Positions 8,099 to 24,580 of a stretch of 64,000 nt of DNA are shown here, in pieces. The stretch covers positions 257,462 through 321,461 of IMG/VR virus record IMGVR_UViG_3300023202_000247; one strand, 5' to 3'. The position numbers and the translations under genes were made by a program. The notes under the pieces were generated by a model. That model did no database searches and was not told the origin of the DNA. It saw only the letters and a list, made by a program, of their open reading frames with translations. The first letter of the stretch is position 1, and each line of letters opens with the position of its first letter.

Positions 8099-11000
8099 AT
8101 GGTTCGCATACGCAAAGTAAATGATATTATATTAAGCTCTCTAGATTTCTATCGTTCAGCTCAACCGCGCCTAGATACGAAGCCTGGAACCATATCCAGA
8201 GATATTCTGGTGGATGGCCCATCTGCGCAAATAGCTAGATTGTATGAAGAGTTGGCGCGCATCAAAGATTCTCAGTCAATTAGAACGGCTCTCGGTGTCG
8301 ATCTTGATAGGCTTGGAGCAAACTTTGGCAAGAGTAGAAAACAGGGTAGCAAGGCTAGCGGGCAAGCTTTAGTTACTTTCAACGAGATAGATGCTGATAT
8401 TCCAATTAGTCGTGGTGATATCGTAACAGCAAATAATGGTGCAACATTTACAGTAACAACAAATACGACTGTTGCGGCAAATAATATAAATGTTTATAGA
8501 GCTACTGCCTCTAAGTTTAGAAGCGATTTAGATTTTGTTGGAATAACGGATCAATATGCTGTTGAGGTTTCGGTTGAGGCAACAGCCATCGGTCGATTGG
8601 GAAATGTTAGCAAATATTCCCTTGCTACCATCAGCACCCCTGGAGCCAGCAATGTTACAAATGCATCTTCTTTTGGTGGTGGCACTGATGCTCAAGACGA
8701 TGCAGCTTTCCGTAGTAATATTTTAGGCGTTTTTGGTGGTGCTGCGGCAGGAACAGAAGAGGGTTATCGACAAAAGGCCAGAGAAGACAATGCTGTTCTG
8801 GACGCAATAGTTGTTGGTCCTGGTAATCCTTTGATGACTCGTGATGGTACACAGGTATTTACGGCCGAAGACGGAACTCAAACCATCATAAGTGAAGGTA
8901 CTGGTGGAAAAGTAGATATTTATATTTTTGGTATCAGGCTTGTTGAAATATTAGACAGTTATATTTACAGAGATCAAAGTAACACTGGTGATCCAACTAA
9001 TACAGCAAACGATTTTGTATTGGGACAAATAGAAGCTGATGAGGGTAAAACTGTTGCTCGCAAGCGTTTGGATGATTTGCAAACTGGAGTTTTACCAAAT
9101 CAACCGGCTAACGACATCATTGAGGTTAGTGGGTCCAGCAGCGGCTCTAATTTCACAGCAAAGAGCACTGATATTTTGGGAAGAGTGACGGGAAACTACG
9201 AATTGGTTCGTGATACCGGTGCGTTTGCAGGAAGCCCATGGGGCTTTGACAAGCTCAGGTGGATTGATGATAGAATAAGAGATTTTAATGAATCACAAAC
9301 AAAGGGTAGATTCAACGGACAAGACGCCTTGTCTTTCTCTGATGTCACGAGAGTTGGAGCTATAACTCAAGATATTACTGTTGTAAATGAAAATAGCAGG
9401 GTTTCTAGTAGTGACAGAACAAGCATACAATTGAGCCATTCTCCAGTAGTTACAGTTAGTCGTGTTTTCAACCTAACAACTGGTGAGCGTTATGTTGTCT
9501 CCAGCCAAAATCCCGATGGTGATGGCAGTTTGAATGAAACTGGTCGTATTACCATAAGCGGCAATACATTACCAGCAACTAGTGATACATTGCAGGTTGA
9601 TTATACTTGGCGCTTGGAATATGATCCTAACTTTGATTATGATAATATAGACAAAAGCTCCAACCCGAGAAGCGCCGTTGATAGTGTTGATTGGGGATTC
9701 AACAATGCTGTTCGCAGAGAGCAACAAAATGTTGTTGTTAATGGTAGTCAAAAAACAGTTACTGTTACACATCCAATTACATCTGTAATAAGCGTAAACA
9801 CATTTGTAAGTGAGGCGAGCACTGTAACGTTGGTACAGGGTCGTTTGGCTGTCGTTGTATCAAATACAGTTGCGAATGTTGTTAGTATAGAAAAAGTGTC
9901 TGATGGTGCAGAACTATTTGATACCAGCAATGATGATGGAAGTATCAGTGGTCTAACCATATTTTTGCCAACAGACACAGTCGGCGTAGTTGGAAATTCA
10001 GTTACAGTAATTTATAATGCCGAAGACGTTTATACTTCTGATGGTATTAGTGGAAGTTTTAATGGTAACGTTATAACATTGAGTCAATCAGCATCAGTTA
10101 CTGCTGGCACCATTGTAGAATGTAATTATATAGCAAATGTAAGAACAATTTTGAGCACCACTCTTTTGCCTGCGTTGCCAGCAGTGCGAAACGGTAACGC
10201 ATTCAATACAACGTCACAAAACAATATCGGTACACAACCATATACTTTCGTGTTCAGTGGCAATGTCGTTGAACAAAACTTGAGATTGTCACCGTCCAGA
10301 CTCGGATTAACGATTGCTGGTAACATTTCTGCCGGTGTAATTACCGTCTCTGGAACGACGTTTAGCGGTGTATTTGACGGTGTGTTTACTGTTGGAACCG
10401 CCGGTTTAACGCAAAACCTATCTTCACTCGTCAAAAATGCAATAGGCATAAGTAGCTCTTCTTCAATATCATCCAACTATGAAGTTGTTAGAGTAATAAG
10501 CTGTAGTAAAGTTACAGCAACTGATTCTAACGATGTTTTGAGCGTAGATCATGACTATGACATCAAAGGTTATGAGCTTAGAAACAATACGTTTGTTAAA
10601 GAGGAAGCTATTGTTGATTCAACATTATCAACAACAGAGTTTACACTTCCATCAACTGAAGGTAATATAGATGAAACACCAGAGGTTGGTGACAAGTTAC
10701 AAGTAACTTTTTACATAGCAAATACAGATGCCAGTGAAAACGTTTCATTTAGCAAATCTGGAACATTGTACACTGACAATATATTTGCAATTGTGGACAC
10801 TATTGCAATTTCTAGTGGATTTACGAGTGGCGATTCACAAACAGCAAGTTTGTCCGTTACAGCTCAGAACCAGCCACAGGCTGGAACGAGGTATAATGTT
10901 GCATATGATTACATTGCTCCAAAAAGCAATGAGCGTATATCTATCAGATATAACGAAAACAAGTTGGTAGCGGATACTACTTTAAATATTGAAAATGTTA

Positions 11001-11338
11001 GAACAATAAGTTCTGATGTTTTGGTTAAATCTGCATCTCCAATTTTAGTAGACGCAACTCTCAATATAGTTGTTTCACAGGGATTTGAAAGCTCTTCTAC
11101 TTTGGTACAACAAAATGTGCAAGATGCTGTTACTAGTGCTTTGAATGCAACTAATCTTGGAACTATAGTTGATGCATCTGATTTGATAGAAGTTGCATAT
11201 ACTGTAGATGGTGTTGATCGTATAAGGGTTATATATTTTAATATCAATGGTCTAAATGGTAGTGCACTAAGTATAGAGGCAGAAGACAATGAATATTTGC
11301 AAGCAAATATTGTAACAGTTAATGTAGAGACTAGATAA
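8099..11338 (+). CDS. Baseplate J/gp6-like wedge protein with large insertions
   Basis: KPGTISRDIL, ALGVDLDRLGANFG, VEATAIGRLGNV, GGTDAQDDAAFR motifs; C-terminal V..AL..TNLG..V..SDLI..AY.VDGV. Confidence 0.85.
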   Translation: MVRIRKVNDIILSSLDFYRSAQPRLDTKPGTISRDILVDGPSAQIARLYEELARIKDSQSIRTALGVDLDRLGANFGKSRKQGSKASGQALVTFNEIDADIPISRGDIVTANNGATFTVTTNTTVAANNINVYRATASKFRSDLDFVGITDQYAVEVSVEATAIGRLGNVSKYSLATISTPGASNVTNASSFGGGTDAQDDAAFRSNILGVFGGAAAGTEEGYRQKAREDNAVLDAIVVGPGNPLMTRDGTQVFTAEDGTQTIISEGTGGKVDIYIFGIRLVEILDSYIYRDQSNTGDPTNTANDFVLGQIEADEGKTVARKRLDDLQTGVLPNQPANDIIEVSGSSSGSNFTAKSTDILGRVTGNYELVRDTGAFAGSPWGFDKLRWIDDRIRDFNESQTKGRFNGQDALSFSDVTRVGAITQDITVVNENSRVSSSDRTSIQLSHSPVVTVSRVFNLTTGERYVVSSQNPDGDGSLNETGRITISGNTLPATSDTLQVDYTWRLEYDPNFDYDNIDKSSNPRSAVDSVDWGFNNAVRREQQNVVVNGSQKTVTVTHPITSVISVNTFVSEASTVTLVQGRLAVVVSNTVANVVSIEKVSDGAELFDTSNDDGSISGLTIFLPTDTVGVVGNSVTVIYNAEDVYTSDGISGSFNGNVITLSQSASVTAGTIVECNYIANVRTILSTTLLPALPAVRNGNAFNTTSQNNIGTQPYTFVFSGNVVEQNLRLSPSRLGLTIAGNISAGVITVSGTTFSGVFDGVFTVGTAGLTQNLSSLVKNAIGISSSSSISSNYEVVRVISCSKVTATDSNDVLSVDHDYDIKGYELRNNTFVKEEAIVDSTLSTTEFTLPSTEGNIDETPEVGDKLQVTFYIANTDASENVSFSKSGTLYTDNIFAIVDTIAISSGFTSGDSQTASLSVTAQNQPQAGTRYNVAYDYIAPKSNERISIRYNENKLVADTTLNIENVRTISSDVLVKSASPILVDATLNIVVSQGFESSSTLVQQNVQDAVTSALNATNLGTIVDASDLIEVAYTVDGVDRIRVIYFNINGLNGSALSIEAEDNEYLQANIVTVNVETR

Positions 11339-14300
11339 TGGCTAATTTGCGTGTCATAAAAGTAGGTGCATCGGACTCCAGAACTATTTTTGCGTCATTT
11401 ACAGACGATCTTGATCCGTTTCTAACCAAAAGTAATGTGACTGTGGAGTCACAAACTGTTGGTGTACCTGATGCTGCGGTTATCTCTCTGGATATCCAAG
11501 AAAACATCATGCGTATAACTACGCAACCAATGACACCAAATGCAGCGTATTTGCTCAAATTTCAAAGCACAGATGGTTCACCGTTCAGAAATGTAAATGG
11601 CACTTCAACACTGTTTCAAGATGGAAAGACAAATGTCTTTTTCATAAGAGGACCGGAAGAGCCTGAGAACTCTATTAGAAACACTCTCATCACATATCTT
11701 TCTCCCAATGAGACTCCATATAACCCAGCGCGTGGAACGCTCATTCGAACTGTTTTGAATGTTTTGAGCACGAATTTTTCACGTGCATTGTTTGATATTC
11801 GTCAAACAAAGAATGAAAGCTATCTCAACGCACGTGTTACTGATGAAAGAAAGGTTCGTGGAAGAGGCCCAACGGATCGTTTGAATCAAGAGGGTGCATT
11901 TGATGTTATTCGTGTGGGCAAAACTCAAACTGATGCAACTATTGATGGAATTTTACAATTTGACAGTTTCCCATTCGATCCGATTACATTGCAGACGGTG
12001 TCCATATCAGCGGAAGATTTGGAGGCCGGTGCCGATGGTGATGCTGGAACTTTTGATCGTTTTGTTTTAACAGTAGATAACGGTCCGATTACCAAGTTAA
12101 AATCTCTTCAAATAGAATACTCTGATGGATATGTTTATCAATATGACATAACTACACTTGGTTATCAGCTAAAAAACCCAAGATATGATACAAAATTTGC
12201 TTCAACATTTGTATTGCTTGATGACAATCAGATAAAGATAAATGAAGATATTTTAGACGATCCTGGTTTCCCACGCATACCCGTGGCTGGCGATACTATG
12301 ACTGTATCGTATGAATACAAAAATCTTGGTATTATTGTTGATGAAGACAGTGTTTCAGTTACAAAGGTTTTGGAGGCCATACGTGAGCCAACACCTGCTT
12401 TGCTAAATGTTTTTAGCTTGGAATTTGCACCAGTGGTAACAAGTTCTGGCAACGTTGCAACTTCTGGCGGCGTTGAATTTTTAGATCCAAATAGCACCAC
12501 GCCATTTTTAACAACTCATCCAGCATTTACAAAAGAAATACCATTTAAGCTCGAAGGGTTACCAAAAGCTATTGGTGAATATGCTGTTGATTATGATAAC
12601 GGTCGTGTATATGTTTACGGAGCAACTTCTGAAAAAGAAGGAACTGGAAACTATCCGCCTGCGGCAACATATAAATACCGAAAGTCTTTTGTTGCAAATT
12701 TAGACTACACGTATGACCCCGAAAGCTTCGAGCTTGTTTCTAGCCCTTTGCGTGATCTAAGCACACAAACGGCTAATATCAACTATGAATATGAAAATAC
12801 GTTAGTTCCTGGAACTGATTTTGAGCCAAAAGTTCATAAAGAAATATTGAATGAAAGAATTGAAAATAGACTTTTAGGAACAAACTCTCTTCAAACCTTG
12901 AATGGTCCAATCACAAATGCATTCAAGGTGTTTAATGAAACAACCAGCGAAGAGTATGGAATTACTAGGTTTAATGATAATAAGGTTTATTTCACATCAA
13001 ATAACTCTCCAAAAATTGTTGATAAGACAGCTGAACGTGTAAACTTTACCAATGTTACAAATGAATCTTTGATTGTCAATAGTGAGTTTAGAAACTCTTC
13101 GAATGTTCGCATTCTAGAAATTCAGCTGCTGAACAACAGGGTAATGTCAATTACGGATGACGTTATAGGAAGCAGCTATAATAGTAGTGTTAGTTTTAGC
13201 AGGAGTGGCATATTCGAACAAGAACTATATTATGATTGGCAGTTATTAACCGTAACTACAAATACTGATAGGTTGACTGTTGGAAAATACCAAGTTGATT
13301 ACAGAAATGGAATAGTATATGTAGGCGTTTCAGAATCCCAAAATTTTGACGTTGGAACTGTCAACTATAAAAAACCTGTAATAAATCCAGTCAATCCTCA
13401 TGTACTTGCTGTAAGTGATATTTATTATAGCACAAATCTAAACCTTGGTCCGACTTTGAGACTAAACTATATCAGCTTTGGTGAAGATGAAATTACACCA
13501 TCGTCATTCAACCTTTCAAATGAAAGATTTTTGAACGGTGATGAAACGATGCAGTATCAAGTTATATCAGATCAAATAACTGTAACTAATGATATACTTG
13601 TTCTTCGTCATCTATACGATGCGTATGATTTAAACAACAATATTGAGCCGGTTAATTTCGCTGATGTTACAACAACCAGTGGCAATGTAATTACTTTGGA
13701 CGGAACTGGTGTTCAAAGGCAAGAAACGTTGGTTGTTGGCGCTGGACTGACGCTGACCACTAGCTTTATAAGTCCTGGAATAAAAATTGGAATGGCGATA
13801 AGTGCCATTAGGGTTTCTGATGGTGCAGAGTTGATTGATGGTTATGAAACTGTAGTTGACAATACCATTACTTTATCTGGAGCAAGTGGCGCTGCTCCTG
13901 GTGATGTTGTAGATTTAATTTACACCGTCATATTGACGGGTGCTGCTACGCCAGTGGTTGATTATGACCGTGGTGGATATTATATAGACTACACGTATCT
14001 TGCAGATGAGATACTGATAACATATGAGTATGGTGACAACTCACTAGATTTTAGTCAAAGTTCTAGTGTAGAAGAGGGTGATGAATACTTTGTTACTTAC
14101 AGATTTGGTGCGCTACGTGATACACTTTTACCAAACTTTGGAAGTTATACTGGTATTCCAGAGGTGTTGGCTTTTGATACCAACCTCAATAGAGAGCGTT
14201 ACAGAGATGCATTGATAGGTATTTTACAATCATTTATCAATGGTCCAACGATTCCATCAATGGAAACACTTGTAAGCAGTATAACTAAAATTGAACCAGA

Positions 14301-17300
14301 GATTTTAGAGAGCATATTTGAGGTATGGTCTCTTGGTATCAGCTATCTTTATAGAGAGCCAATTCGTGTCATAGGCGACCCGGCGTTAGTTCCTGGTAAG
14401 TTTGACAATGGTTTATTGATTAAAGAAGATGGATATGGAGTCACATTCCCGGTTTCTAGCAATTTGAGATTGGAAGAAGGAACGCTTGAATTCTGGGTCA
14501 TTCCTGAGTGGAATGGTTTGGATAATGATGCTACTTTGACATTTAGCAATTTAAAGAAAGATGGCTATGCTGTTTCAGCATCAAATATTTTCATCGGATC
14601 TGGAAGCTATAATCCAACGCTGTCTGATGGTAAGTTTTCGATAAACAGAACGGATGAGTTGAGCCCGGTGGGACTTCCATCTAAGATATTTACAGAAACA
14701 GGATTTTTTATTTATTATGATAGTGATGTTTCTGAGTGGAAAGTCTTAGCAAAAGATAAACCAGATGGCTATACATATAGTGGTCAAATTCTTTCCAGTG
14801 GAGAGGTTTATCATGTTCGCTCTATAGATGGTTTAACTGAGCTTGGTGATGTCATCAGATCCGGTGTAGATAAGATTGATTTTTCTTTTAGTATCGATGC
14901 GTCTGATGCAAGCAGTCCTGATGGATACAAAACTGGAGATGGCTATGTGCCGGGTTACTCATTTGATGGTCTTCAGTTCATGGCAGATGATGTTCACTAC
15001 TTGTTTGATTTTGCGGATAAATCCGACAAAAATAGGTTCAGTGTATTTAAAGATGGCCGCGGTTATATAAATTTCAGAGTTTGGGATCGTGGCGGTGGTT
15101 ACGTTCAAAAAGACACCCGACGTACAGACTACATGGTTAGCGCCGATATTCAAGATTGGCTTGCTGGACAAAAACATCACGTTGCCGTCTCTTGGTCACT
15201 CAACAGCAAAGATCGTAGAGATGAAATGCATCTTTACATAGACGGTTTCGAAGTTCCAAACATATTGTTTTATGGAGGTAGGCCGATTGGTACTACATCT
15301 GATAGGTTCAGAACTGTAAAGCCTGAAATAGTTGCTGGTACTGTTCCAAAAAATGCTGTTACTGGAGATGCTTTGAGTACAACTCAAGGTTCAGCCGTTG
15401 TCTCTACCAATGAATTCAATTTTTCTTCTTTGGGCGTATCGCCCGGAGATACAATTTTAATATTGGAAACAGGATTTACATCTTATACTATTTTGAGCGT
15501 AAGTGGAGGAACATTGACTCTTGATACATCAATGCCTGCAACGCTTGGAGACGCTAGGTTTAGTGTAAATCCATTTACATCAATTGTTTCAACAAACATG
15601 GATATGTTTACCAATGTTGCAGTCTCATACCTGAGAGGTGGGGAAGAGACGGAACTGCCTGGATTGCGGGCTGAACTACCCGGATATTCCATAAACAGAA
15701 ATGCATTGAACCAAAATGTATTAACCATTTTGGGTGATGTTGAAACCGGAGATCAGATTCTCATTCGCACGCTAGGTTTGAATCATCGCAGATGCAGAGA
15801 AGATGTATACATATGGGGCAATACGCAGTCCGTATTGAAAACAGCATTGCCTCCGCCGATAAACTTAGACGAAGTTTCTATCAAGAAGATTGTTTTTCCA
15901 CTTACATCAATTGGACCAGCAAACTCTTCAATTATCGCTGGAGAGTTCGTTGCTACTGGTTTGAGCGCAACTCAACCAACAAACTCGACTGAAGGGCGAC
16001 AGCTTACCGTTAGAGTTACTGGTGGAAATGTAGACTTTACAACTCCTACATCAGTAACAATAAATGGTACGACGGCTGGTGGACCAACGAGTGAGACGTT
16101 GACGTTCTCATCAGCTGAATCTCAAACTACCACTGAAAAATTTCTAACTATTAGTGGTGTTGATGTAACAACTAAGCCGTTGTCAACTTCCAGTGTTGGT
16201 TTGGCAGTAGAAATTAAAGAGACTTATAGTATAACTATGCCAAATGGTAATAGTTCATATCCAGTTATTCGTTTTGCATACAAGACACAGCAAGGTGTTT
16301 CTCTGGAGGGCAACGGTGGTGTGGTAGTTAGCGACCCGAACGGATTTTTCCCGTTGAGCGAAGTTGGTAATTTGATGGTTATCACTTCGCCGCCGGCTGT
16401 CACTGGAACTTATACCATACAAGATAGGCTTGATAATACAACGGTTAGAATATCACCAGCACCGGGCGTGGCATTTAGTGGAGCAGCCTATGAGCTTTAT
16501 AATATAAACATTGGGCGCAGCGGGTTCCAAAACGGATTCTTTTTCCTCAACGAAGCTGGTACGACAAATGATCCATATCCGTTAAGTGAGGGCTTTTATG
16601 AGTTTGATTACCAAGCATACTTGGAAGTTCCATTTGATCCAATTAACCAAGATGCGTATGTTGGAACAGATTTTACCATGTCTCATCCTTCTAAAGCTGT
16701 TATTGATGAATTGAGAATATCAAATTATCAGTTAACAGATACGAGAGTTGGTGAGACTCTTAGCGTTAATGAAGAAAGTGTTACCACTAGCTACCAGTCT
16801 CTAAATCCATTTGTTAAAAATCAAAATACATTGATGTTGCTTCATTTTGATGAATATCCTCTAGAAAATGATAGTGATTTTTACAAGTTTGCAAATCGCG
16901 AATATGTTCAAAGTGGCACGAGTGTAAATGCTAACTTTGATCAATCCATATGTTTTGTTAATAGAGGATTATCATTTGATAATAAGGGGACGCTAACAAC
17001 ACGTAGTGAGGGAACGATAGAATTCTGGGTTAGTCCTCGATTTGATACGTATAACGATCCCGTTCCTCGATTCTACTTTGACGCTATAGCTTCGGTATTG
17101 GAAGAGGTTGTAAGTACTACGACAGGAATGGTAAAAGTTTCTGGTAGAATCGGAGAAGTTTTAAGTGTTCGATTGCAGTCTGACGAACAAAATCAGGGCG
17201 AGGAATACTTTGATGGCGGCAGTGTTGTTGATGATAGACAAACGATAATATTGAAGCGAGCATTGCCTTATCAAAGAACACCTGTAAAAGTTGCGTATGT

Positions 17301-18018
17301 TCCAACCGGTGTAAAGGGAGACAGGATTAGTATACTGAAAGATTCGTCTGGTTTCATTGCATTCAACGTTCGCGCCAACGAACAAGAGTTTCAGGTTAGA
17401 ACACCTGTGTTTTGGCCACGTGATACGTGGCACAGAGTACGTGCCACTTTCAAATTCAATAGACCAGACAATTTGGATCAGATTAGATTGTTTGTTGATG
17501 GAGAAGAGCGCGGAATATTAACATTTGGAAGCGGAATTCTTTTCGGCGGGGGCGCTATTTTTGGACAAACAACCGTTGGAGTTACCAATCAAATCTTGAT
17601 AACTAATATTGATTTTACGGATACTATGACTAGATATCACATTGGTCAAGATTTCACCGGATCGAATGTCGCTGAAGCTAGAATGGATAATTTCCGTCTC
17701 AGCAACATATCCAGGGATCCGATTACAATTGCTGGTCAACCATTTGATACAAATTACTCTTCCAATAACAATGTAGTATTTCCTGTCATAGAGGATGCTT
17801 TTACGACATTTTTGCTCAATTTTGATAGATTGATTGAAAAAGTTGATGATTTTGCTATATTAAGAGATGAGAACTTTGGTATATTCAACTTCACTTTAAA
17901 TATCATTGATTCTTTCCGCATACTTCTAGATAACCCGCGTTCAGAAGAAATATTGCGTTCAGCTATAAATAGGTTGAAACCAGCAAATGCAAAGGTCGAA
18001 ATCAACATAGTTAGATAA
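11338..18018 (+). CDS. Giant baseplate wedge protein (gp7/P2 gpI-like scaffold) with Ig-like and two LamG/ConA-like domains
   Basis: RERYRDAL...GPTIPSM (gpI-like), terminal LKPAN; LamG motifs EGTLEFWV, HHVAVSW, HLYIDG, IDELRISN and EGTIEFWV, WHRVRATF, RLFVDG, MDNFRLSN. Confidence 0.65.
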   Translation: MANLRVIKVGASDSRTIFASFTDDLDPFLTKSNVTVESQTVGVPDAAVISLDIQENIMRITTQPMTPNAAYLLKFQSTDGSPFRNVNGTSTLFQDGKTNVFFIRGPEEPENSIRNTLITYLSPNETPYNPARGTLIRTVLNVLSTNFSRALFDIRQTKNESYLNARVTDERKVRGRGPTDRLNQEGAFDVIRVGKTQTDATIDGILQFDSFPFDPITLQTVSISAEDLEAGADGDAGTFDRFVLTVDNGPITKLKSLQIEYSDGYVYQYDITTLGYQLKNPRYDTKFASTFVLLDDNQIKINEDILDDPGFPRIPVAGDTMTVSYEYKNLGIIVDEDSVSVTKVLEAIREPTPALLNVFSLEFAPVVTSSGNVATSGGVEFLDPNSTTPFLTTHPAFTKEIPFKLEGLPKAIGEYAVDYDNGRVYVYGATSEKEGTGNYPPAATYKYRKSFVANLDYTYDPESFELVSSPLRDLSTQTANINYEYENTLVPGTDFEPKVHKEILNERIENRLLGTNSLQTLNGPITNAFKVFNETTSEEYGITRFNDNKVYFTSNNSPKIVDKTAERVNFTNVTNESLIVNSEFRNSSNVRILEIQLLNNRVMSITDDVIGSSYNSSVSFSRSGIFEQELYYDWQLLTVTTNTDRLTVGKYQVDYRNGIVYVGVSESQNFDVGTVNYKKPVINPVNPHVLAVSDIYYSTNLNLGPTLRLNYISFGEDEITPSSFNLSNERFLNGDETMQYQVISDQITVTNDILVLRHLYDAYDLNNNIEPVNFADVTTTSGNVITLDGTGVQRQETLVVGAGLTLTTSFISPGIKIGMAISAIRVSDGAELIDGYETVVDNTITLSGASGAAPGDVVDLIYTVILTGAATPVVDYDRGGYYIDYTYLADEILITYEYGDNSLDFSQSSSVEEGDEYFVTYRFGALRDTLLPNFGSYTGIPEVLAFDTNLNRERYRDALIGILQSFINGPTIPSMETLVSSITKIEPEILESIFEVWSLGISYLYREPIRVIGDPALVPGKFDNGLLIKEDGYGVTFPVSSNLRLEEGTLEFWVIPEWNGLDNDATLTFSNLKKDGYAVSASNIFIGSGSYNPTLSDGKFSINRTDELSPVGLPSKIFTETGFFIYYDSDVSEWKVLAKDKPDGYTYSGQILSSGEVYHVRSIDGLTELGDVIRSGVDKIDFSFSIDASDASSPDGYKTGDGYVPGYSFDGLQFMADDVHYLFDFADKSDKNRFSVFKDGRGYINFRVWDRGGGYVQKDTRRTDYMVSADIQDWLAGQKHHVAVSWSLNSKDRRDEMHLYIDGFEVPNILFYGGRPIGTTSDRFRTVKPEIVAGTVPKNAVTGDALSTTQGSAVVSTNEFNFSSLGVSPGDTILILETGFTSYTILSVSGGTLTLDTSMPATLGDARFSVNPFTSIVSTNMDMFTNVAVSYLRGGEETELPGLRAELPGYSINRNALNQNVLTILGDVETGDQILIRTLGLNHRRCREDVYIWGNTQSVLKTALPPPINLDEVSIKKIVFPLTSIGPANSSIIAGEFVATGLSATQPTNSTEGRQLTVRVTGGNVDFTTPTSVTINGTTAGGPTSETLTFSSAESQTTTEKFLTISGVDVTTKPLSTSSVGLAVEIKETYSITMPNGNSSYPVIRFAYKTQQGVSLEGNGGVVVSDPNGFFPLSEVGNLMVITSPPAVTGTYTIQDRLDNTTVRISPAPGVAFSGAAYELYNINIGRSGFQNGFFFLNEAGTTNDPYPLSEGFYEFDYQAYLEVPFDPINQDAYVGTDFTMSHPSKAVIDELRISNYQLTDTRVGETLSVNEESVTTSYQSLNPFVKNQNTLMLLHFDEYPLENDSDFYKFANREYVQSGTSVNANFDQSICFVNRGLSFDNKGTLTTRSEGTIEFWVSPRFDTYNDPVPRFYFDAIASVLEEVVSTTTGMVKVSGRIGEVLSVRLQSDEQNQGEEYFDGGSVVDDRQTIILKRALPYQRTPVKVAYVPTGVKGDRISILKDSSGFIAFNVRANEQEFQVRTPVFWPRDTWHRVRATFKFNRPDNLDQIRLFVDGEERGILTFGSGILFGGGAIFGQTTVGVTNQILITNIDFTDTMTRYHIGQDFTGSNVAEARMDNFRLSNISRDPITIAGQPFDTNYSSNNNVVFPVIEDAFTTFLLNFDRLIEKVDDFAILRDENFGIFNFTLNIIDSFRILLDNPRSEEILRSAINRLKPANAKVEINIVR

Positions 18019-18020
18019 TT

Positions 18021-20945
18021 ATGACTAAAAGAATACCAGTATCAACAACAGAAGTTTTGTGGCACGATGCTCAGCGCGTTGATCGCGGTGACATGAATAC
18101 CGAGCAACTAAGCAAAAACCAAAATGACGCATCTATAATCAATAATCATTTTGGCTCAGGGGTATTGCCTTCAACTCCCATACAAACAGTTTTATTCGAT
18201 TCTGATAATTTAAGCCAAATTCAAGCAGCAACTCTTGCCGCTGGTGATTTTGATGGTACCGGCTTTCAACCGGCCCAACAGCCAAGTGATAACAGTCTTG
18301 GCAATCAGCTAGAGGTTGAGCTTACGGGAAGTAGTGTTTTTGGAAGGCTTAGTGTAAAAGTTTTAATAGTTGGTGTAGACTTTGATGGTAATCCCCAATA
18401 TGATAGATTTGTTTTTCATAGAAATGAAAAGCAAGTTACTGGAAAACACTATGCAAGAATTTTAGGATTGTTTTTCAATGACTTTAAAGGAAACAATAAT
18501 TGTTCTCGTAATCAAGGTGGTCGAATAGTCATTCGTGAAGCTGCAAGTTTTCAGCTGAGCAGAGACCCGATAATGGTAGCTCAAGATGTGGAGCCAAACC
18601 TTTTCTTTAGAGATTTCAAGGTTCCGAATCCATCGGTAACGTTGTATAATACCATTCAAACTGGTATAGGTTCTGAATACAGTGTTGACTCTCTTGATAT
18701 AAATACTACAGTTAAAGTAAATAGAATTTTATCAGCTGGAGATGTAACAACTAAAATTGGACAAAAATTTCAAGCTGTTACAAACAACATTCAAAAAATC
18801 ACGCTGTTGTTGGGTGCTCAAAGAGATGATGCTGCTAGTGTAGAAAACCGTTATAATTGGGCCGGGCAGCTTGTAATTAGTGTTTATGAGTTACAAACCA
18901 GTGTTAGTTGTCCAACAGATATAAGCCCAGAGTTACAAATAGAATTTGATCCAACTGCAAACCCAATTGCACAGATAAGTGTAAGTCAATCGGAGTTACG
19001 TGCACTTGGGTATGTTTTAACTGATGTTCTACAACCAGTAGATTTCGTTTTCAGTGATACGCAACTGGGTTCAACAACAAATCCGATAATAGTTCCAAAT
19101 AGATATTACGCTGTTACCATAAACCGAGCCGGGGCGGCATCATCGGGAGCGGTATTTACCGGTGTTGGAAACGATGTATTAGACAATAGTAGACTTACGA
19201 CATATTCTGGTACATGGGTTGATGTTGTTGAAGAAGATATGTGGTTCCAGGTTTGGGATGACGCTGCTAAGGTGGCTGATGGTCAAGCTTATGATTGTGG
19301 TAATGGTATGGAAATTTCCAAGACCATTGAAAACGATCTTGGTGCCGAGATAGATTATTCGTTTGATGATAACGCTTTTGTTGATAGCGGTGAAGGCATC
19401 TTAAATATAGCAGTTGTTGAGGCTATACAAGAAGAAAGTGTTGAAGAGCAAGACGAACGTACTGGAAATCCAGTTAACTCTAGGCAAAAATTCGAACCAA
19501 GCTTTAGCTTTGTAACTGAGTCTGGTTTAGCTACGTTGCGAGAAACCACCGAACCGTTGATTATCGGGTGTGGTGAAGACATCAATCCAAAGCAAAATAC
19601 TGATTTGGAAAAGATGCAACTTTTGCCAGGTCTTGCAAAGGGAGATACGTTTACAGTAGTTAATCCTGATGCTGATTTATTGTCTAACAACTTGGTTGGA
19701 AGCAAGCTCATTCCGAACAACGGCTGTGCTGCAAAAGAATACAGGATATTCAAAGTCATATCTTGTACGGATGGATATGGTGATGTAAATGGTGATGGAT
19801 ACATTAACGACGCAGATATATCTAGAGTGGCAGAGCTTATTGGAGAAAGCGTATATTCAGCATCAACTCAACAAAAGATAGTTGACGGTTACATCAGCAC
19901 ACTAGAGTTGTTGAGGGCCGATGTAGATGGTGATGGATACATTACATCAACAGATGTATCTTTGATTACACAATATGTAAATAGAGATATCAATGCGTTT
20001 CCAGTTGGTTCTACGTTCCAACACATGGATATTCGTGTCCAGCAATCAATTGGAAGAAATGATGGTTATTTTGATTGTGATGGATACATAAGACTTGACG
20101 GTTATCTTGGTCAAAATATCGTTTCGCCAAGCTCTTTGGATCCATATGAGTTGATTTATGATGGATACATAACTACACCAAGTATCGACGGTGATGATCC
20201 TATATTTAGCACAGTGCCATTTCCAGGTGTAACATATGAAATTCTAGCACAACCATTTTGGCAAGATTACTTTTTGCCGTTTAGTAGTGATGTTCGAGTT
20301 GTACCAGCGGCGTTTACGTTTGACGAATCAGTTGTGATACCAGACTGCTCTCCACCCTCATTCTTCTCTTGTTTTGACAGGGCGAGTGTGGATCTGGACT
20401 GTGAGCCTGGACGAAATGACATTCTCATACCAGACAATTTGATAATGCGTCGAGGGCAAATTCTCAACCCTGATGGAACACATTACAAAGTCGATTTCGA
20501 GTTAAAGACAATAATATTGCAATTGCCAGAAGTACCATTTGAAGAGCAGAGTATAAATGTGTTTGGCAAGTTGGTTGCTGATGCTGGTGACGGCAGAACG
20601 TCCGCCGGTTATGATGCTGCAAGATTTGCCGACTGTACGACGGTAAAACCTGATGCATTAGCAAAAAATCAGGTAAGGTTTGGCGTCTCGGTTCAAGCTT
20701 TCGTACCGAATCTTGATGGATACGATTCGGATGGGTATGGTGTTATCGTAGATGACATAATCGGCGTTTACATGGATCAGGTAAATGGAATTTTGACACT
20801 GTCAATTCAAGATTTAGAAGTTGATGATATTTACAGAACTCTTGTTACAAAGATTGAAATTCAAGTATTTTTGAAAAAGGCTGGCTGGAATAACAGCGTG
20901 CTCACCATCGAGCCGAGCCAGGTGCCTGGATTGTTGAGTACATAG
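18021..20945 (+). CDS. Virion protein with a dockerin type I-like paired EF-hand domain
   Basis: GDVNGDGYINDAD and ADVDGDGYITSTD loops each followed by a helix; N-terminal LWHDAQRVDRGDMNTEQ resembles the start of baseplate/tail proteins. Confidence 0.6.
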   Translation: MTKRIPVSTTEVLWHDAQRVDRGDMNTEQLSKNQNDASIINNHFGSGVLPSTPIQTVLFDSDNLSQIQAATLAAGDFDGTGFQPAQQPSDNSLGNQLEVELTGSSVFGRLSVKVLIVGVDFDGNPQYDRFVFHRNEKQVTGKHYARILGLFFNDFKGNNNCSRNQGGRIVIREAASFQLSRDPIMVAQDVEPNLFFRDFKVPNPSVTLYNTIQTGIGSEYSVDSLDINTTVKVNRILSAGDVTTKIGQKFQAVTNNIQKITLLLGAQRDDAASVENRYNWAGQLVISVYELQTSVSCPTDISPELQIEFDPTANPIAQISVSQSELRALGYVLTDVLQPVDFVFSDTQLGSTTNPIIVPNRYYAVTINRAGAASSGAVFTGVGNDVLDNSRLTTYSGTWVDVVEEDMWFQVWDDAAKVADGQAYDCGNGMEISKTIENDLGAEIDYSFDDNAFVDSGEGILNIAVVEAIQEESVEEQDERTGNPVNSRQKFEPSFSFVTESGLATLRETTEPLIIGCGEDINPKQNTDLEKMQLLPGLAKGDTFTVVNPDADLLSNNLVGSKLIPNNGCAAKEYRIFKVISCTDGYGDVNGDGYINDADISRVAELIGESVYSASTQQKIVDGYISTLELLRADVDGDGYITSTDVSLITQYVNRDINAFPVGSTFQHMDIRVQQSIGRNDGYFDCDGYIRLDGYLGQNIVSPSSLDPYELIYDGYITTPSIDGDDPIFSTVPFPGVTYEILAQPFWQDYFLPFSSDVRVVPAAFTFDESVVIPDCSPPSFFSCFDRASVDLDCEPGRNDILIPDNLIMRRGQILNPDGTHYKVDFELKTIILQLPEVPFEEQSINVFGKLVADAGDGRTSAGYDAARFADCTTVKPDALAKNQVRFGVSVQAFVPNLDGYDSDGYGVIVDDIIGVYMDQVNGILTLSIQDLEVDDIYRTLVTKIEIQVFLKKAGWNNSVLTIEPSQVPGLLST

Positions 20946-21505
20946 TGGCAATGATATCAATACCGGTTTCTAGCGATGTTGGAAAATTGTTTAGAGGATT
21001 GGATGTTCCCGGTAATCGGGATCCATCTGATCACATCACGATGTTCTATTTTGACAAAGAGCTTCCGATAAAAAAGTTAGTAAAAGCAGTATCAATAATT
21101 TATGAAGTTTTATTGGAACAAGAGCCATTTTCTGTTTGTACCAAAAAAGTAAAATCTTTTCCAAAAGGAAAAGATGGGTATCCAATCATAGTAGAAATAG
21201 ACTCTAAAGAGCTGGTAAAATTAAGAAACAAAATGGCAAAAGCTTTAGATGCTAACAAAATTAGATACTCTAAAAAGTTTCCTGTATATTCTCCACATTT
21301 AACTTTGAGCTATAGTAAAGAAGACATCAAAAGTTTTGATTTAGATGTTAGCTGGCTCGTTAATGAAATTAAACTATATGGTGGCGATAGATACCGTGAA
21401 AGATTGTTGGTTAGTTTTCCCTTGATAATAAAAAGTATGGAAAAAAAGGCAGCATATGCAAATATGTTAGCTGACATTTGGATTAATGAAATCAATCGAG
21501 TTTGA
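20945..21505 (+). CDS. 2H phosphoesterase (2'-5' RNA ligase superfamily; Acb1/T4 gp57B-like)
   Basis: Two HxT motifs: DHITMFY and YSPHLTLSY. Confidence 0.8.
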   Translation: MAMISIPVSSDVGKLFRGLDVPGNRDPSDHITMFYFDKELPIKKLVKAVSIIYEVLLEQEPFSVCTKKVKSFPKGKDGYPIIVEIDSKELVKLRNKMAKALDANKIRYSKKFPVYSPHLTLSYSKEDIKSFDLDVSWLVNEIKLYGGDRYRERLLVSFPLIIKSMEKKAAYANMLADIWINEINRV

Positions 21506-21529: not shown

Positions 21530-22684
21530 ATGAAAGTCAAAATACAAGGATTTCTTGGTACCAATCATAGTTGGAGTATAGTTCAGCAAAATATAGCTCG
21601 TGGTTTGCTAGCTAATGGCCATGATGTACATTTACAGTCAACTAATGGTTATGATAAATTTCCAAAAGATTTAGAGCCATATAAAAGGCGTGTCTTAGAA
21701 AAAGAATATGATATGCAGTTATCTTATACTGCAATGAAAAACTTTCACGCCTATTTGAGTAATGGTCAAAAAAATCGTTTTGGCATTTGGAATTTTGAGA
21801 GCACGGTATTACCAAAAGGTTTTGCCAAGTATCATAAGTTTGCAGATAAAATGTTGCCATCATCTGAGTTTGCAAAGAGTGTTTTTGTCAGAAATGGTGT
21901 TCCAGATGATAAGTTGGTTGTTATTCCGCATGGTATCAATGTAGAAGAGTATTCTACTGATGATGTTTATCAGTTGCAAACTGATAAGAAAACAAAGATA
22001 CTTACTAACATAGCTCAACCACATGTTCGCAAAAACCTTCCTGGTTTGTTTGAAGCTTATGGTATGGCATTTGATAAAAACGATGATGTATGCTTAGTTG
22101 CAAAAGTATCGGTGAAAAATTTTGATAATAACCATCAAAAGTCATTCAAAAACAGACGCGCTCAAAAAAGAGCGCAGCCAAAAGATAAAAATGATATTCA
22201 ATACTTTGATGTTGACTTTTGGAAAATATATAAGTCTTTCAAAAACAAATTTCCTAATCATGCTGAAGTTGAAATCATAACGGATTTTTTACCAACTATG
22301 GCTCCATTGTATAATGCAACCGACATAGTTTATTCCATGACGCATGCTGAATGCTTTTGGCTTCCTGGTTTAGAGGCTCTTGCAACGGATAATTTAGTAA
22401 TTGCTCCTCGTTATGGTGGGCAGCTTGACTTTTTGAACGATGAAAATTCTCTTTTAGTCGAGGGGAAGATTGTTCGAGCACCTAGAAACATGCAGTATTG
22501 GGTACCAAGCCCTTACGCTGAAATGTTCGAACCATCACTTGATGATGCCGCTGATAAGCTAAAACAAGCAGTATCACAATATGATGTTCTCATGAAAGAC
22601 TTTCGCCCAAAAATGAAGGAACAAACTGATAGGTTGACATGGAAAAATGTTGCTCGTATGATATTGGATTTGTGTGATGAGTAA
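21530..22684 (+). CDS. Glycosyltransferase, GT4 (GT-B fold)
   Basis: PSSEFAKSVF, VIPHGIN, RKNLPGLFEAY, ECFWLPGLEALA...GGQLDFL. Confidence 0.9.
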   Translation: MKVKIQGFLGTNHSWSIVQQNIARGLLANGHDVHLQSTNGYDKFPKDLEPYKRRVLEKEYDMQLSYTAMKNFHAYLSNGQKNRFGIWNFESTVLPKGFAKYHKFADKMLPSSEFAKSVFVRNGVPDDKLVVIPHGINVEEYSTDDVYQLQTDKKTKILTNIAQPHVRKNLPGLFEAYGMAFDKNDDVCLVAKVSVKNFDNNHQKSFKNRRAQKRAQPKDKNDIQYFDVDFWKIYKSFKNKFPNHAEVEIITDFLPTMAPLYNATDIVYSMTHAECFWLPGLEALATDNLVIAPRYGGQLDFLNDENSLLVEGKIVRAPRNMQYWVPSPYAEMFEPSLDDAADKLKQAVSQYDVLMKDFRPKMKEQTDRLTWKNVARMILDLCDE

Positions 22685-22955
22685 AAAGAAATCAAAAGTT
22701 TTACAAAAGCAAGAGTTACTGTATTATGCTTTGGAATCGGAAACGGGATACTCTTCTAATACACGTGAAATTTTCAAATCCATTGACTCTAGCTTTTTGG
22801 AGCGAAAATTGAAGGAAGGAAGTTGCCTTCTCGTTCCTGCCATGGAAGAGGTTTTTGACAAGAAAATACCATATGAGCGTGGCAATTTTGAAGAAGGTCG
22901 ATTAAAATGGGTGGAGTATCTGAATGATATCAATAGTAATACCAGTTCTAAATAA
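22674..22955 (+). CDS. Hypothetical protein
   Basis: 93-aa ORF overlapping both neighbours in the operon. Confidence 0.5.
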   Translation: MMSKKKSKVLQKQELLYYALESETGYSSNTREIFKSIDSSFLERKLKEGSCLLVPAMEEVFDKKIPYERGNFEEGRLKWVEYLNDINSNTSSK

Positions 22956-23625
22956 TTGGAATTTTACCAAAGCTTGCTTGCAAGACCTTCAAAAATTAAC
23001 GGTTCCAAATGAAATCATTGTTGTTGACAATGGTAGTGATGATAAAACTACACAGGAAATTGTGAATTTTGAAGGTATAATACATCATCGTTTTGAAGAA
23101 AACACTGGGTTTGCTCATGCTTGCAACAAAGGATTTACGATTACCAAAGGTAAATATGTGTTGTTTTTAAACAATGATGTTCGTGTTCGTTCTCAACATT
23201 CCAACTGGGTTGAGCCGCTGATGAAAGCAGCTGATGGGCGAAAGCTCGTGGGTCCGACAGTTGGCGTCCTTACCAATGACTTCAATTTTGTCAAAGAAAG
23301 TGATTGTTTCATTGGTGATGACTATCAGTATTATATGAGTGGTTGGAATTTGACTGCTCTACGCTCTGTATTTGAAGACTTAACCTTGGAAGAATATGAT
23401 GGGCCTTTTACCGAGGAGATGGGCAAGGCTTATTTTGAGGATACTGATTTGGGTTTTCGAGCGCGAGAACGAGGCATTGGTTTCGAGATTGTGAACGTAC
23501 CCGTTCACCACTTTGGCAAAATGACCAGTAAAAAGCTAAATACTTTATCATTGTATCAACCTGCAAAAATGAAATTCATACAAAAATGGAAAAACCGAGC
23601 TGGAAATATTACCTTAAAACACTGA
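22924..23625 (+). CDS. Glycosyltransferase, GT2
   Basis: ISIVIPVLN, IIVVDNGSDD, NTGFAHACNKG, VLFLNNDV, YFEDTDLGFR. Confidence 0.9.
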   Translation: MISIVIPVLNNWNFTKACLQDLQKLTVPNEIIVVDNGSDDKTTQEIVNFEGIIHHRFEENTGFAHACNKGFTITKGKYVLFLNNDVRVRSQHSNWVEPLMKAADGRKLVGPTVGVLTNDFNFVKESDCFIGDDYQYYMSGWNLTALRSVFEDLTLEEYDGPFTEEMGKAYFEDTDLGFRARERGIGFEIVNVPVHHFGKMTSKKLNTLSLYQPAKMKFIQKWKNRAGNITLKH

Positions 23626-23792
23626 TAGTAGTAGCCATAGTATTGATTCTACCATACATATCAGTGTTATTTACTTTTGCCATTACAACATTTTTTGGTG
23701 CTAGTGCCATTGTTTGCATCAAACTTTCGTTATTTGTCGGTATTACAGTTGCAATATTGCTTGGATTTTTAATCATAAAAGGACAATTATGA
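23586..23792 (+). CDS. Small two-TM membrane protein
   Basis: 68 aa with two hydrophobic stretches; ATGA-type overlap with next gene. Confidence 0.45.
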   Translation: MEKPSWKYYLKTLIVVAIVLILPYISVLFTFAITTFFGASAIVCIKLSLFVGITVAILLGFLIIKGQL

Positions 23793-24580
23793 AGATTCAT
23801 GTGTTAACACTAACCTGGAATGCTCTTAATAAATTGCGTGCAAATAGCGAACACTTGTTTATCGCCATGAATGATTTTGATTGGACATGGCATTTGAGAG
23901 ATAATGGTTCCAAGGATGAAACCGTGGCTGAATTCTCTGATAAGCAAAACGTATGTTTATACGATATTGGACATAATCGTGATACGTTTGCAATGGGCAT
24001 GAATTATCTATTTAAAAAAGCATCGCCGGCTAAAGATGATGTGCTATTACTATTGAACAATGATGTTTCTGTTGGACGAGAAAGTATCAAGCAAATGCAT
24101 TCTCTCATGACAAAAACAAAAGCAGATGTTGTTGGTTGTCGTTTGTTGTATAATGGTACAAACAAACTTCAACATGCTGGAGTTATCTTTGGACCCAGGT
24201 ATAACAATTTACCATTTCATTTTCGGCCAGGAGAAGTTTCCGACTCGAATGCTGAAAAGGACCGTTATTTTCAAGCCGTTACAGCTGCTTGTTGTTTGGT
24301 AAAGGCATCTGCGTGGGAAGCAGTTGGAGGTATGGATGAAGATTTCAAATGGGCTTTTGATGACGTAACACTTTGTTTGAGTATAAAAAACAATGGAGGT
24401 AAAATTGCCTATTGTGGCAAAACCAAGTCATTCCATGAAGAGAGCGCATCTTTAAAGAAAAATCCCGTAAATAAGATGTTCATTCAGCATAATGTATCAA
24501 AGTTTAAAGAAAAATGGTCTGGTCGTTATGATATAGATCATGATAAATATCTAAAAGATTCTAACTATAATGTAATATGA
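23789..24580 (+). CDS. Glycosyltransferase, GT2
   Basis: Start refined to ATG 23789 after AAAGGA; RDNGSKD, LLLLNND, LQHAGV, AVTAAC, GGMDEDF...FDDV. Confidence 0.9.
   Translation: MKIHVLTLTWNALNKLRANSEHLFIAMNDFDWTWHLRDNGSKDETVAEFSDKQNVCLYDIGHNRDTFAMGMNYLFKKASPAKDDVLLLLNNDVSVGRESIKQMHSLMTKTKADVVGCRLLYNGTNKLQHAGVIFGPRYNNLPFHFRPGEVSDSNAEKDRYFQAVTAACCLVKASAWEAVGGMDEDFKWAFDDVTLCLSIKNNGGKIAYCGKTKSFHEESASLKKNPVNKMFIQHNVSKFKEKWSGRYDIDHDKYLKDSNYNVI

What the first reader, a model, noticed from the sequence alone, without database searches (positions are those of the whole stretch)
20945..21505. Acb1-like 2H phosphoesterase at the end of the baseplate operon: candidate anti-CBASS enzyme
Seen: HITM and YSPHLTLSY motifs preceded by IDSKELVKLRNKMAKALDA. 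Known: T4 Acb1 (gp57B) is a 2H phosphoesterase that degrades CBASS cyclic oligonucleotides and has a similar YTPHITLSY motif. Inference: counter-defence nuclease, coupled to a virion gene and possibly late-expressed or packaged. RNA repair (LigT-like) is the alternative.
Basis: partly seen in the sequence, partly recalled or inferred. Interest (0 to 1): 0.6.

Follow-up and report, generated by a model that had tools for sequence, protein, structure and literature searches.

The report
Phage LigT-like 2H phosphodiesterase gene
The gene is real and encodes a two-histidine (2H) phosphodiesterase from a large, phage-only clade lying between bacterial ThpR/LigT and the anti-CBASS enzyme Acb1; it is a plausible but unproven destroyer of host immune nucleotide signals, and not a true Acb1 family member.

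Summary
The ORF at 20945-21505 (+) is real. It encodes a 186-aa 2H phosphoesterase with both catalytic HxT motifs (H30-I-T32, H118-L-T120).

It is not a bona fide Acb1:
- It scores 25.3 bits on Pfam Acb1, below the 27-bit cut-off.
- It is about 35 aa longer than Acb1.

It is not a ThpR either:
- TIGR02258 gives 29 bits against a cut-off of 65.7.
- The catalytically essential Arg of ThpR's HxTxxR motif is a Tyr here, as in Acb1. Both extended motifs read HxTxxY.

Profile comparison places its family between the two. It matches Acb1 (98%, E 3e-13) and ThpR (95%, E 2e-8), while Acb1 and ThpR do not detect each other.

The family is large (118 or more 50%-identity clusters at E<=1e-30), essentially viral, and frequent on 200-450 kb phage contigs. 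It sits in varied accessory-gene neighbourhoods. It is never next to an RNA ligase in the neighbourhoods examined, and in one lineage it lies about 8 kb from an Apyc1-like gene.

Best guess (0.45): a counter-defence phosphodiesterase for nucleotide immune messengers. Main rival (0.3): RNA 2',3'-cyclic-phosphate end healing. It is a new member of the known, diverse class of viral 2H PDEs.

The parts
20945..21505 (+). 2H phosphoesterase gene (186 aa; GTG start, alternative ATG at 20951)
   Evidence: ORF list and translation. Pfam PF13563 38.7 bits, PF23474 Acb1 25.3 bits. AF2 model pLDDT 84.7 with a 2H fold.
21032..21049 (+). Proximal catalytic motif H30-I-T32-M-F-Y35 (HxTxxY)
   Evidence: H30 is conserved in 151/151 and T32 in 145/151 ungapped relatives; position 35 is Y/H/C/F. 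It corresponds to ThpR 43-HxTxxF-48 (PMC4201822) and T4 Acb1 H44..Y49.
21278..21313 (+). Distal block F112-P-V-Y115-S-P-H118-L-T120-L-S-Y123 (Acb1-like; HxTxxY)
   Evidence: H118 156/156, T120 152/156, Y123 146/156 (Arg in 1/156), with aromatics at 112 and 115. It aligns to Acb1 F/Y107-P-D-Y110-x-P-H113-I-T-L-S-Y118. ThpR has its essential Arg130 at the Y123 position (PMC4201822).
21434..21499 (+). C-terminal amphipathic helix (res 164-185) with conserved aromatic W179; a possible lid or interaction element (inferred)
   Evidence: Predicted helix 164-185 at pLDDT about 62-75. W/Y/F sits at this position in the close homologues and is the commonest class family-wide. It is not aligned to any PDB 2H chain (model range ends at about 162-166).
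20943..20947 (+). Stop/start overlap TAGTG with the upstream gene (possible translational coupling)
   Evidence: Sequence. There is no terminator-like site on the + strand between 17500 and 24000.
18021..20945 (+). Upstream 974-aa protein with dockerin-type repeat (probable fibre/adhesin); a conserved neighbour
   Evidence: Pfam Dockerin_1. The same neighbour occurs in L008, L020 and L021.
11338..18018 (+). 2226-aa protein with ConA-like lectin domain (probable baseplate/fibre component)
   Evidence: Pfam Laminin_G_3. Syntenic 2230-aa gene in L008.
8099..11338 (+). gp6-like baseplate wedge protein
   Evidence: phrog_6 E 2e-33. 30% identity to Bacillus phage G gp188 baseplate wedge.
21530..22684 (+). 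Downstream GT4 glycosyltransferase, first gene of a sugar-modification cluster; a conserved neighbour
   Evidence: phrog_2170 and Pfam Glyco_transf_4. Same order in L008, L020 and an ENA contig.

Best explanation
The gene encodes a soluble, metal-independent 2H phosphodiesterase of a phage-specific LigT-like clade. The two HxT motifs (H30/T32, H118/T120) would act as general acid and base on a phosphodiester or cyclic phosphate next to a ribose hydroxyl. Y123 would replace ThpR's Arg at the scissile phosphate. Conserved aromatics (Y35, F72, F112, Y115, Y/W145) would stack on nucleobases. The most likely biological role is counter-defence: hydrolysis of small nucleotide immune messengers made by the host. 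Candidates are CBASS cyclic di- and trinucleotides, or related 3'-5'/2'-5' linked signals such as type III CRISPR cOA. The exact substrate cannot be read from the sequence. The gene is probably transcribed with the late baseplate/fibre genes and the glycosyltransferase genes. Shown: the fold, the catalytic residues, the family placement and the synteny. Inferred: the substrate, the counter-defence role and the timing of expression.
For: Catalytic tetrad and 2H fold. Acb1 is the nearest characterised phage family. Its best PHROG is phrog_755 at 33 bits, which is the Acb1 family: T4 gp57B scores 228 bits and FBB1 Acb1 199 bits. hhalign of the family profile against an Acb1 profile gives 98.0%, E 2.9e-13 over 105 columns, against 95.4%, E 1.7e-8 for a ThpR profile. 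The only weak tblastn hits in isolate phages are mostly Acb1 genes. Both extended motifs are HxTxxY as in Acb1, whereas ThpR's essential Arg130 (R130A inert, PMC4201822) is Tyr in 146/156 relatives. The clade is essentially viral: the nearest ESM Atlas clusters are 86-100% Uroviricota. It is large and sits in changing accessory-gene neighbourhoods. No RNA ligase gene appeared within 10 kb in the roughly 45 neighbourhoods examined (by precomputed Pfam; only by BLAST to this phage's own ligases). Two of the four 2H-bearing phage genomes that are at least 90% complete have neither a PF09414 ligase nor RtcB. In the closest large relative (392 kb, 42% identity) the gene lies about 8 kb downstream, on the same strand, of an Apyc1-family anti-Pycsar nuclease and a NUDIX/NMNAT-like gene. 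Another relative sits among AcrVA2-like, GmrSD_N and SNF2 genes. Literature: phage and eukaryotic-virus LigT-like PDEs repeatedly serve immune-signal degradation (PMC9117128, PMC11410667), and 5 of 7 tested structural groups of viral 2H PDEs cut at least one messenger (10.1101/2025.08.21.671373).
Confidence: 0.45

Rival explanations
1. It is an RNA 2',3'-cyclic phosphodiesterase (ThpR-like end healing). The enzyme opens the 2',3'-cyclic phosphate left on tRNA or mRNA by host anticodon nucleases or other metal-independent RNases, as part of the phage's RNA-repair capacity.
Against: ThpR's essential Arg130 is Tyr (PMC4201822). The score is far below the TIGR02258 equivalog cut-off (29.4 against 65.7). 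The ligases in this genome lie 160-200 kb away, and no neighbourhood pairs the 2H with a ligase. No AAA_33-type kinase or Tpt1 was found, though the genome is only 75% complete. RtcB needs no CPDase. Two near-complete 2H-bearing genomes lack PF09414 ligases and RtcB.
Confidence: 0.3
2. It is a phosphodiesterase for another small cyclic phosphate, for example ADP-ribose 1'',2''-cyclic phosphate or another NAD-derived or 2',3'-cNMP metabolite. It would work in the manner of yeast Cpd1 or plant CPDase.
Against: No Tpt1/KptA, the source of Appr>p, was found in the genome. Similarity to plant CPDase is weaker than to ThpR or VP3. No conserved link to NAD-processing genes appears across neighbourhoods.
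Confidence: 0.12
3. It is a virion-associated enzyme, packaged or attached to the baseplate or fibre and delivered with the DNA. This would modify any of the activities above.
For: Its start overlaps the stop of a fibre-like gene. That synteny is conserved in four related contigs. A second lineage also has the gene beside a Peptidase_S74 fibre gene. 2H domains fused to or placed beside head-morphogenesis proteins exist in other phages. An extra C-terminal helix is present.
Against: The protein is not fused to any structural domain. Many relatives sit among non-structural small ORFs. There are no proteomic data. T4 acb1 also neighbours a fibre chaperone gene without any evidence of packaging in the sources read.
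Confidence: 0.08

Closest known systems
Acb1 (T4 gp57B, Erwinia phage FBB1 Acb1; Pfam PF23474, phrog_755; PDB 7T26/7T27)
   Same: Both are phage-encoded 2H PDEs with an HxT/HxT tetrad, and both extended motifs are HxTxxY. They share the block aromatic-P-x-Y-x-P-H-x-T-L-S-Y, and an aromatic (F72) sits at the position of Acb1's residue 74. hhalign gives 95-98%. The Acb1 core aligns at 2.9 A over 129 of 137 residues. Both genes lie beside tail-fibre-related genes.
ThpR/LigT RNA 2',3'-cyclic phosphodiesterase (E. coli ThpR 4QAK/5LDM; TT0787 1IUH; PH0099 1VDX; D. radiodurans CPDase 5H7E; TIGR02258)
   Different: The HxTxxR Arg, which is essential in ThpR, is Tyr here. The score is 29 bits against a 65.7 cut-off. 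The clade is viral rather than cellular. E. coli ThpR hits no PHROG at all.
Diverse viral 2H PDEs (Doherty et al. 2025 preprint; e.g. PDE-9 of Burkholderia phage BCSR5, PDB 9Q2Y; penguinpox cGAMP PDE 9BKQ)
   Different: No close sequence relative exists in isolate phages. I could not determine which of their structural groups, if any, this clade belongs to.
2'-5' phosphodiesterases (rotavirus VP3 C-terminal domain, MHV ns2, AKAP7)
   Different: These are eukaryotic or eukaryotic-virus proteins acting on 2-5A. The window protein itself scores only 12.3 bits on AKAP7_NLS.
Bacillus phage G gp240 (uncharacterised 2H, annotated 'RNA ligase')
   Same: It is the top structural match among viral models. 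hhalign gives 87%. It shows the same mixed Pfam pattern, including a weak Acb1 hit at YTPHITMAY. Phage G is also the nearest isolate for the baseplate wedge protein.
   Different: The similarity is remote. The genomic context differs, being a replication/ligase region, and no function is known.

Membership tests
2H phosphoesterase superfamily | Two H-x-T/S motifs on a pseudo-symmetric two-lobed beta fold | tested here: met
Acb1 (PF23474 / phrog_755) | Score above the curated Pfam gathering threshold | tested here: not met
   25.3 bits against a cut-off of 27, and 24.7 bits in the genome search. T4 Acb1 as control scores 202.7 bits. A few relatives do pass: P0073 at 35.8 and P0102 at 29.0.
Acb1 (PF23474 / phrog_755) | Active-site HxT/HxT tetrad with Tyr at +5 of each His | tested here: met
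   H30..Y35 and H118..Y123. T4 has H44..Y49 and H113..Y118.
Acb1 (PF23474 / phrog_755) | Nucleobase-stacking aromatics equivalent to Y12, W74 and F107 (PMC9117128) | tested here: inconclusive
   F112 aligns with position 107 and F72 with position 74. The Y12 equivalent is M3 here (F in 63, M in 45 of the relatives). The position-74 and Y12 equivalents are also aromatic in ThpR (W82 and F8), so only the position-107 equivalent discriminates. The pairings rest on sequence alignment, not on superposed coordinates.
Acb1 (PF23474 / phrog_755) | C-terminal adenine-contact Glu and short Trp-bearing lid (residues 141-152) | tested here: not met
   The alignment to Acb1 ends at residue 127. The C-terminal third aligns to ThpR instead. 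A longer helix with W179 is present, but its equivalence to the lid is only conjecture.
Acb1 (PF23474 / phrog_755) | Cleavage of 3'3'-cGAMP and other CBASS signals; protection from CBASS | not testable with these tools
   This needs biochemistry and infection assays.
ThpR/LigT (TIGR02258 equivalog) | Score above the curated equivalog cut-off | tested here: not met
   29.4 bits against 65.7, with relatives at 34-42 bits. E. coli ThpR as control scores 149 bits.
ThpR/LigT (TIGR02258 equivalog) | Extended motifs HxTxxF and HxTxxR, with the Arg essential (PMC4201822) | tested here: not met
   The proximal motif HxTxxY is aromatic and compatible. The distal motif is HxTxxY, with Y123 in 146/156 and Arg in 1/156.
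ThpR/LigT (TIGR02258 equivalog) | Overall LigT-type fold of about 175-185 aa | tested here: met
Phage RNA-repair module (healing plus sealing) | Linkage or co-occurrence with an RNA ligase, polynucleotide kinase or Tpt1 | tested here: not met
   Ligases are present in this genome but 160-200 kb away. No AAA_33 kinase or Tpt1 was found. No ligase appears in any examined neighbourhood. A PF09414 ligase is present in 7/35 and RtcB in 4/35 family-bearing records (4 over the PF09414 cut-off), and 2 of the 4 near-complete genomes have neither. The Rnl1 search was uninformative because its control did not ring.

The most novel reading that the evidence does not exclude
This phage-only clade may be the evolutionary bridge through which a cellular ThpR-type CPDase became Acb1-type messenger nucleases. 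Its members would then use a different lid, the C-terminal amphipathic helix with a conserved aromatic, and have a substrate range not covered by Acb1. They might target a host signal not yet described. In this lineage the enzyme would be produced with the virion's late genes, or even delivered with the virion.
Probability: 0.15. Interest if true: 0.6.

Novelty: new member of a known kind. Interest (0 to 1): 0.35.

Why it matters
Viral 2H phosphodiesterases are a recurrent way for viruses to erase nucleotide immune signals, and their substrate range varies with the core fold. This gene represents a large, uncultured, mostly huge-phage clade. At the profile level it links ThpR-type RNA-end enzymes with Acb1. 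It replaces ThpR's essential Arg with the Tyr found in Acb1. Assaying one or two members would show whether the Arg-to-Tyr change and the extra C-terminal helix mark the switch from RNA-end healing to messenger degradation. It would also add a marine or microbial-mat jumbo-phage lineage to the catalogue of counter-defence enzymes. As it stands, this is a sound annotation rather than a surprise.

Tried and rejected
1. tblastn of the protein and of relative P0162 against 50,697 isolate phage records found no match at E<=1e-5 or 1e-2. At E<=10 there were only weak hits, mostly to Acb1 genes.
2. PADLOC gave no hit.
3. Sequence-only PDB searches, with a single sequence and with an 8-sequence profile, gave only sub-significant hits mixing Acb1, penguinpox PDE and LigT-like chains with spurious uS7 matches. 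They did not discriminate.
4. The C-terminal extensions of 240-833-aa fusion relatives have almost no Pfam or PHROG domains (one LRV, one metallopeptidase) and gave no functional clue.
5. Recurrent neighbours in a second lineage of about 15 loci (proteins of 652, 173 and 299 aa) have no PDB or isolate-phage matches. Only a Peptidase_S74 fibre gene, CSD, HNH and patatin could be named nearby.
6. I searched for Rnl1 (PF09511), but the control genomes did not ring, so that absence is uninformative.
I used Enterobacterales ThpR sequences instead, so the ThpR profile is less diverse than the Acb1 one.
8. I considered a programmed frameshift or read-through fusion with the upstream gene and rejected it. 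The frames differ, there is no slippery site, and the junction differs among relatives.
9. I considered a role in the adjacent glycosylation cluster and rejected it for lack of any precedent for 2H enzymes acting on sugars.
10. Not done: read laying, because no RNA run holds the region; complex prediction; a phylogenetic tree, because Acb1 and ThpR are not alignable to each other.
Full report
**Observation**

The window holds an ORF at 20945-21505 on the + strand (186 aa). T4 gp57B (Acb1) does carry YTPHITLSY.

The GTG start shares one base with the TAG stop of the upstream 974-aa gene (TAGTG, 20943-20947). An ATG two codons later is an alternative start. Homologues begin MAM... or MIA....

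The genes upstream are a gp25-like baseplate protein, a gp6-like baseplate wedge protein, a 2226-aa lectin-domain protein and a 974-aa dockerin-repeat protein. Downstream, 24 nt later, a GT4 glycosyltransferase opens a long sugar-modification cluster. No + strand terminator-like site lies between 17.5 and 24 kb. The gene is therefore at the junction of the baseplate/fibre block and a glycosylation block, not at the end of an operon.

The window is the last 64 kb of a 321-kb IMG/VR virus record estimated to be 75% complete. Its nearest isolate for the baseplate protein is the 497-kb Bacillus phage G, at 30% identity.

**What the protein is**

Pfam scores are as follows:

| Family | Bits | Cut-off |
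|---|---|---|
| PF13563 2_5_RNA_ligase2 | 38.7 | 27 (above) |
| PF23474 Acb1 | 25.3 | 27 (just below) |
| 2H-SAK | 21.1 | below |
| LigT_PEase | 20.7 | below |

Controls behave cleanly. T4 Acb1 hits only PF23474 (202.7 bits). E. coli ThpR hits only LigT_PEase and PF13563.

The best PHROG is phrog_755 (33 bits, near full length). I showed this to be the Acb1 family, since T4 gp57B scores 228 bits and FBB1 Acb1 199 bits, while ThpR hits no PHROG. NCBIfam's ThpR equivalog TIGR02258 gives 29.4 bits against a cut-off of 65.7, and relatives score 34-42 bits.

An AlphaFold2 model (pLDDT 84.7) has the 2H fold plus a C-terminal helix at residues 164-185.

- Among viral models the top hit is phage G gp240, and an annotated Acb1 appears only at rank 36.
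- ESM Atlas structural neighbours are bacterial LigT-like clusters.

**A family between ThpR and Acb1**

The word-based search found only 7 relatives. The exhaustive profile search found 1011 representative clusters at E<=1e-3 and 118 at E<=1e-30. Many carry uncharacterised C-terminal extensions.

I used a 156-sequence family alignment for profile-profile comparison:

| Comparison | Probability | E-value | Columns |
|---|---|---|---|
| Family vs 6-sequence Acb1 profile | 98.0% | 2.9e-13 | 105 (residues 4-127) |
| Family vs 10-sequence ThpR profile | 95.4% | 1.7e-8 | 142 (residues 3-151) |
| Acb1 profile vs ThpR profile | 2.9% | - | - |

The family therefore sits between the two. Its N-terminal strand, HITxxYLGD, FP....P.VI and NEIxLYGG elements are LigT-like. 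The block F/Y-P-x-Y-x-P-H-x-T-L-S-Y is Acb1-like.

The most informative residue is at +5 from the distal His. In ThpR this is Arg130, which contacts the phosphate, and R130A is inert (PMC4201822). Here it is Tyr123 (Tyr in 146 of 156 relatives, Arg in 1), as in Acb1 (Y118). According to that paper it is also Tyr in yeast Cpd1 and plant CPDase. Both extended motifs are HxTxxY here and in T4 Acb1.

Acb1's C-terminal ligand contacts (E141 and the W147 lid; PMC9117128) have no alignable counterpart. The C-terminal helix carries a conserved aromatic (W179), but any lid role for it is conjecture.

**Context**

The order [about 2230 aa]-[about 976 aa dockerin protein]-[2H]-[GT4/GT1]-[GT2...] is kept in four related contigs whose 2H proteins are 42-48% identical.

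Other relatives sit in quite different places:

- among small ORFs with radical SAM, HSP20, PTH2 and DSP phosphatase genes;
- beside ThyX;
- beside HNH, CSD and LAGLIDADG genes.

An IMG/VR scan returned 80 loci, many on 200-450 kb contigs. None of 38 family loci shares this window's neighbours by BLAST. About 15 loci form a second lineage in which the gene is divergently adjacent to a Peptidase_S74 fibre gene and a 1952-aa protein.

In the closest large relative (392 kb) the gene lies about 8 kb downstream, on the same strand, of an Apyc1-family anti-Pycsar nuclease, a NUDIX/NMNAT-like gene and PTH2. In another it lies among AcrVA2-like, GmrSD_N and SNF2 genes.

The nearest ESM Atlas clusters by sequence features are 86-100% viral.

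**RNA repair**

The genome encodes an 800-aa RtcB fusion, a 237-aa PF09414 ligase and a tRNA_bind-ligase fusion. These lie 160-200 kb from the 2H gene. No AAA_33 kinase or Tpt1 was detected.

Across 35 family-bearing records, 7 have a PF09414 ligase and 4 have RtcB. None of these lies near the 2H gene. Of the four genomes that are at least 90% complete, two have neither ligase type. RtcB needs no CPDase. The RNA-repair reading is therefore weakened but not excluded. The jumbo-phage literature proposes exactly this role for 2H enzymes, and also a counter-signalling role (PMC7824862).

**Interpretation**

Chemistry: a metal-independent 2H phosphodiesterase. H30 and H118 act as the acid/base pair. 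T32, T120 and Y123 sit at the phosphate, and the conserved aromatics stack on bases.

Biology: I favour degradation of host nucleotide immune messengers (0.45). The reasons are:

- Acb1 is the nearest characterised phage family;
- the Arg-to-Tyr signature is shared with Acb1;
- the clade is viral and mobile among accessory regions;
- it lacks linkage to ligases;
- there is precedent that viral LigT-like PDEs are repeatedly used this way (PMC9117128, PMC11410667, 10.1101/2025.08.21.671373).

The last of those papers also shows that substrate range differs between structural groups and that two groups cut no tested messenger. 'Anti-CBASS' specifically cannot be claimed.

Rivals are ThpR-like RNA>p healing (0.3), another cyclic-phosphate metabolite such as Appr>p (0.12), and virion delivery as a modifier (0.08).

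**Verdict**

This is an Acb1-related but LigT-shaped phage 2H phosphodiesterase. It is neither an Acb1 family member nor a ThpR orthologue, and its function is untested. It is a new member of the already recognised, diverse class of viral 2H PDEs, and its interest is moderate.

Noticed in passing
window 21530-44237: A long same-strand sugar-modification cluster directly downstream of the 2H gene. It holds GT4 (21530-22684), at least four GT2 genes (22924-23625, 23714-24580, 25485-26243, 29295-30047), Glyco_trans_1_2 (31170-32117), a DegT-type aminotransferase (36612-37628, - strand) and GDP-mannose 4,6-dehydratase (40827-41825). Relatives keep GT genes after the 2H gene. It may glycosylate virion proteins or host surface.
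   Followed up: partly
window 45246-46625: A TubZ/PhuZ-like tubulin gene (Pfam Tubulin plus TubZ-like_C), typical of some jumbo phages.
   Followed up: no
window 52579-56286: A ribonucleotide reductase large subunit interrupted by an intein with a LAGLIDADG homing endonuclease domain, 1235 aa in all.
   Followed up: no
G000 (own genome) about 117147-119549, 88707-89420 and 76976-78283 (L006:325-2727, L004:1432-2145, L005:1054-2361): Three RNA ligase genes outside the window: an RtcB with an unannotated N-terminal extension of about 390 aa, a 237-aa PF09414 ligase, and a tRNA_bind-domain/RNA-ligase fusion.
   Followed up: partly
window 11338-20945: Two giant fibre or baseplate-associated proteins: 2226 aa with a ConA-like lectin domain, and 974 aa with a dockerin type I repeat. 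Neither has a PHROG match. Both are conserved in related contigs.
   Followed up: partly
L015:52-1854 (Pseudomonas phage psageK9 gp70); L023:2677-3648 (Gordonia phage ChisanaKitsune gp21): 2H or Acb1-like domains occur inside or next to head-morphogenesis genes. One lies in a 600-aa protein just after the terminase. Another is a 323-aa 'RNA ligase' between the portal gene and a VIP2-like ADP-ribosyltransferase gene. BFVD and Atlas also show 2H domains fused to capsid-morphogenesis or S78 protease proteins.
   Followed up: no
L187:1107-3111 (IMG/VR 392-kb phage, relative of the 2H at 42% identity): An Apyc1-family (anti-Pycsar) MBL nuclease and a NUDIX/CTP_transf-like gene lie about 8 kb upstream of the 2H homologue on the same strand, together with PTH2 and PhoH/PIN genes. 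This may be a counter-defence island. It is seen in one lineage only, G001/G003.
   Followed up: partly
window 2908-3822: A 304-aa protein with weak endonuclease VII and endonuclease PHROG matches lies within the structural gene block.
   Followed up: no
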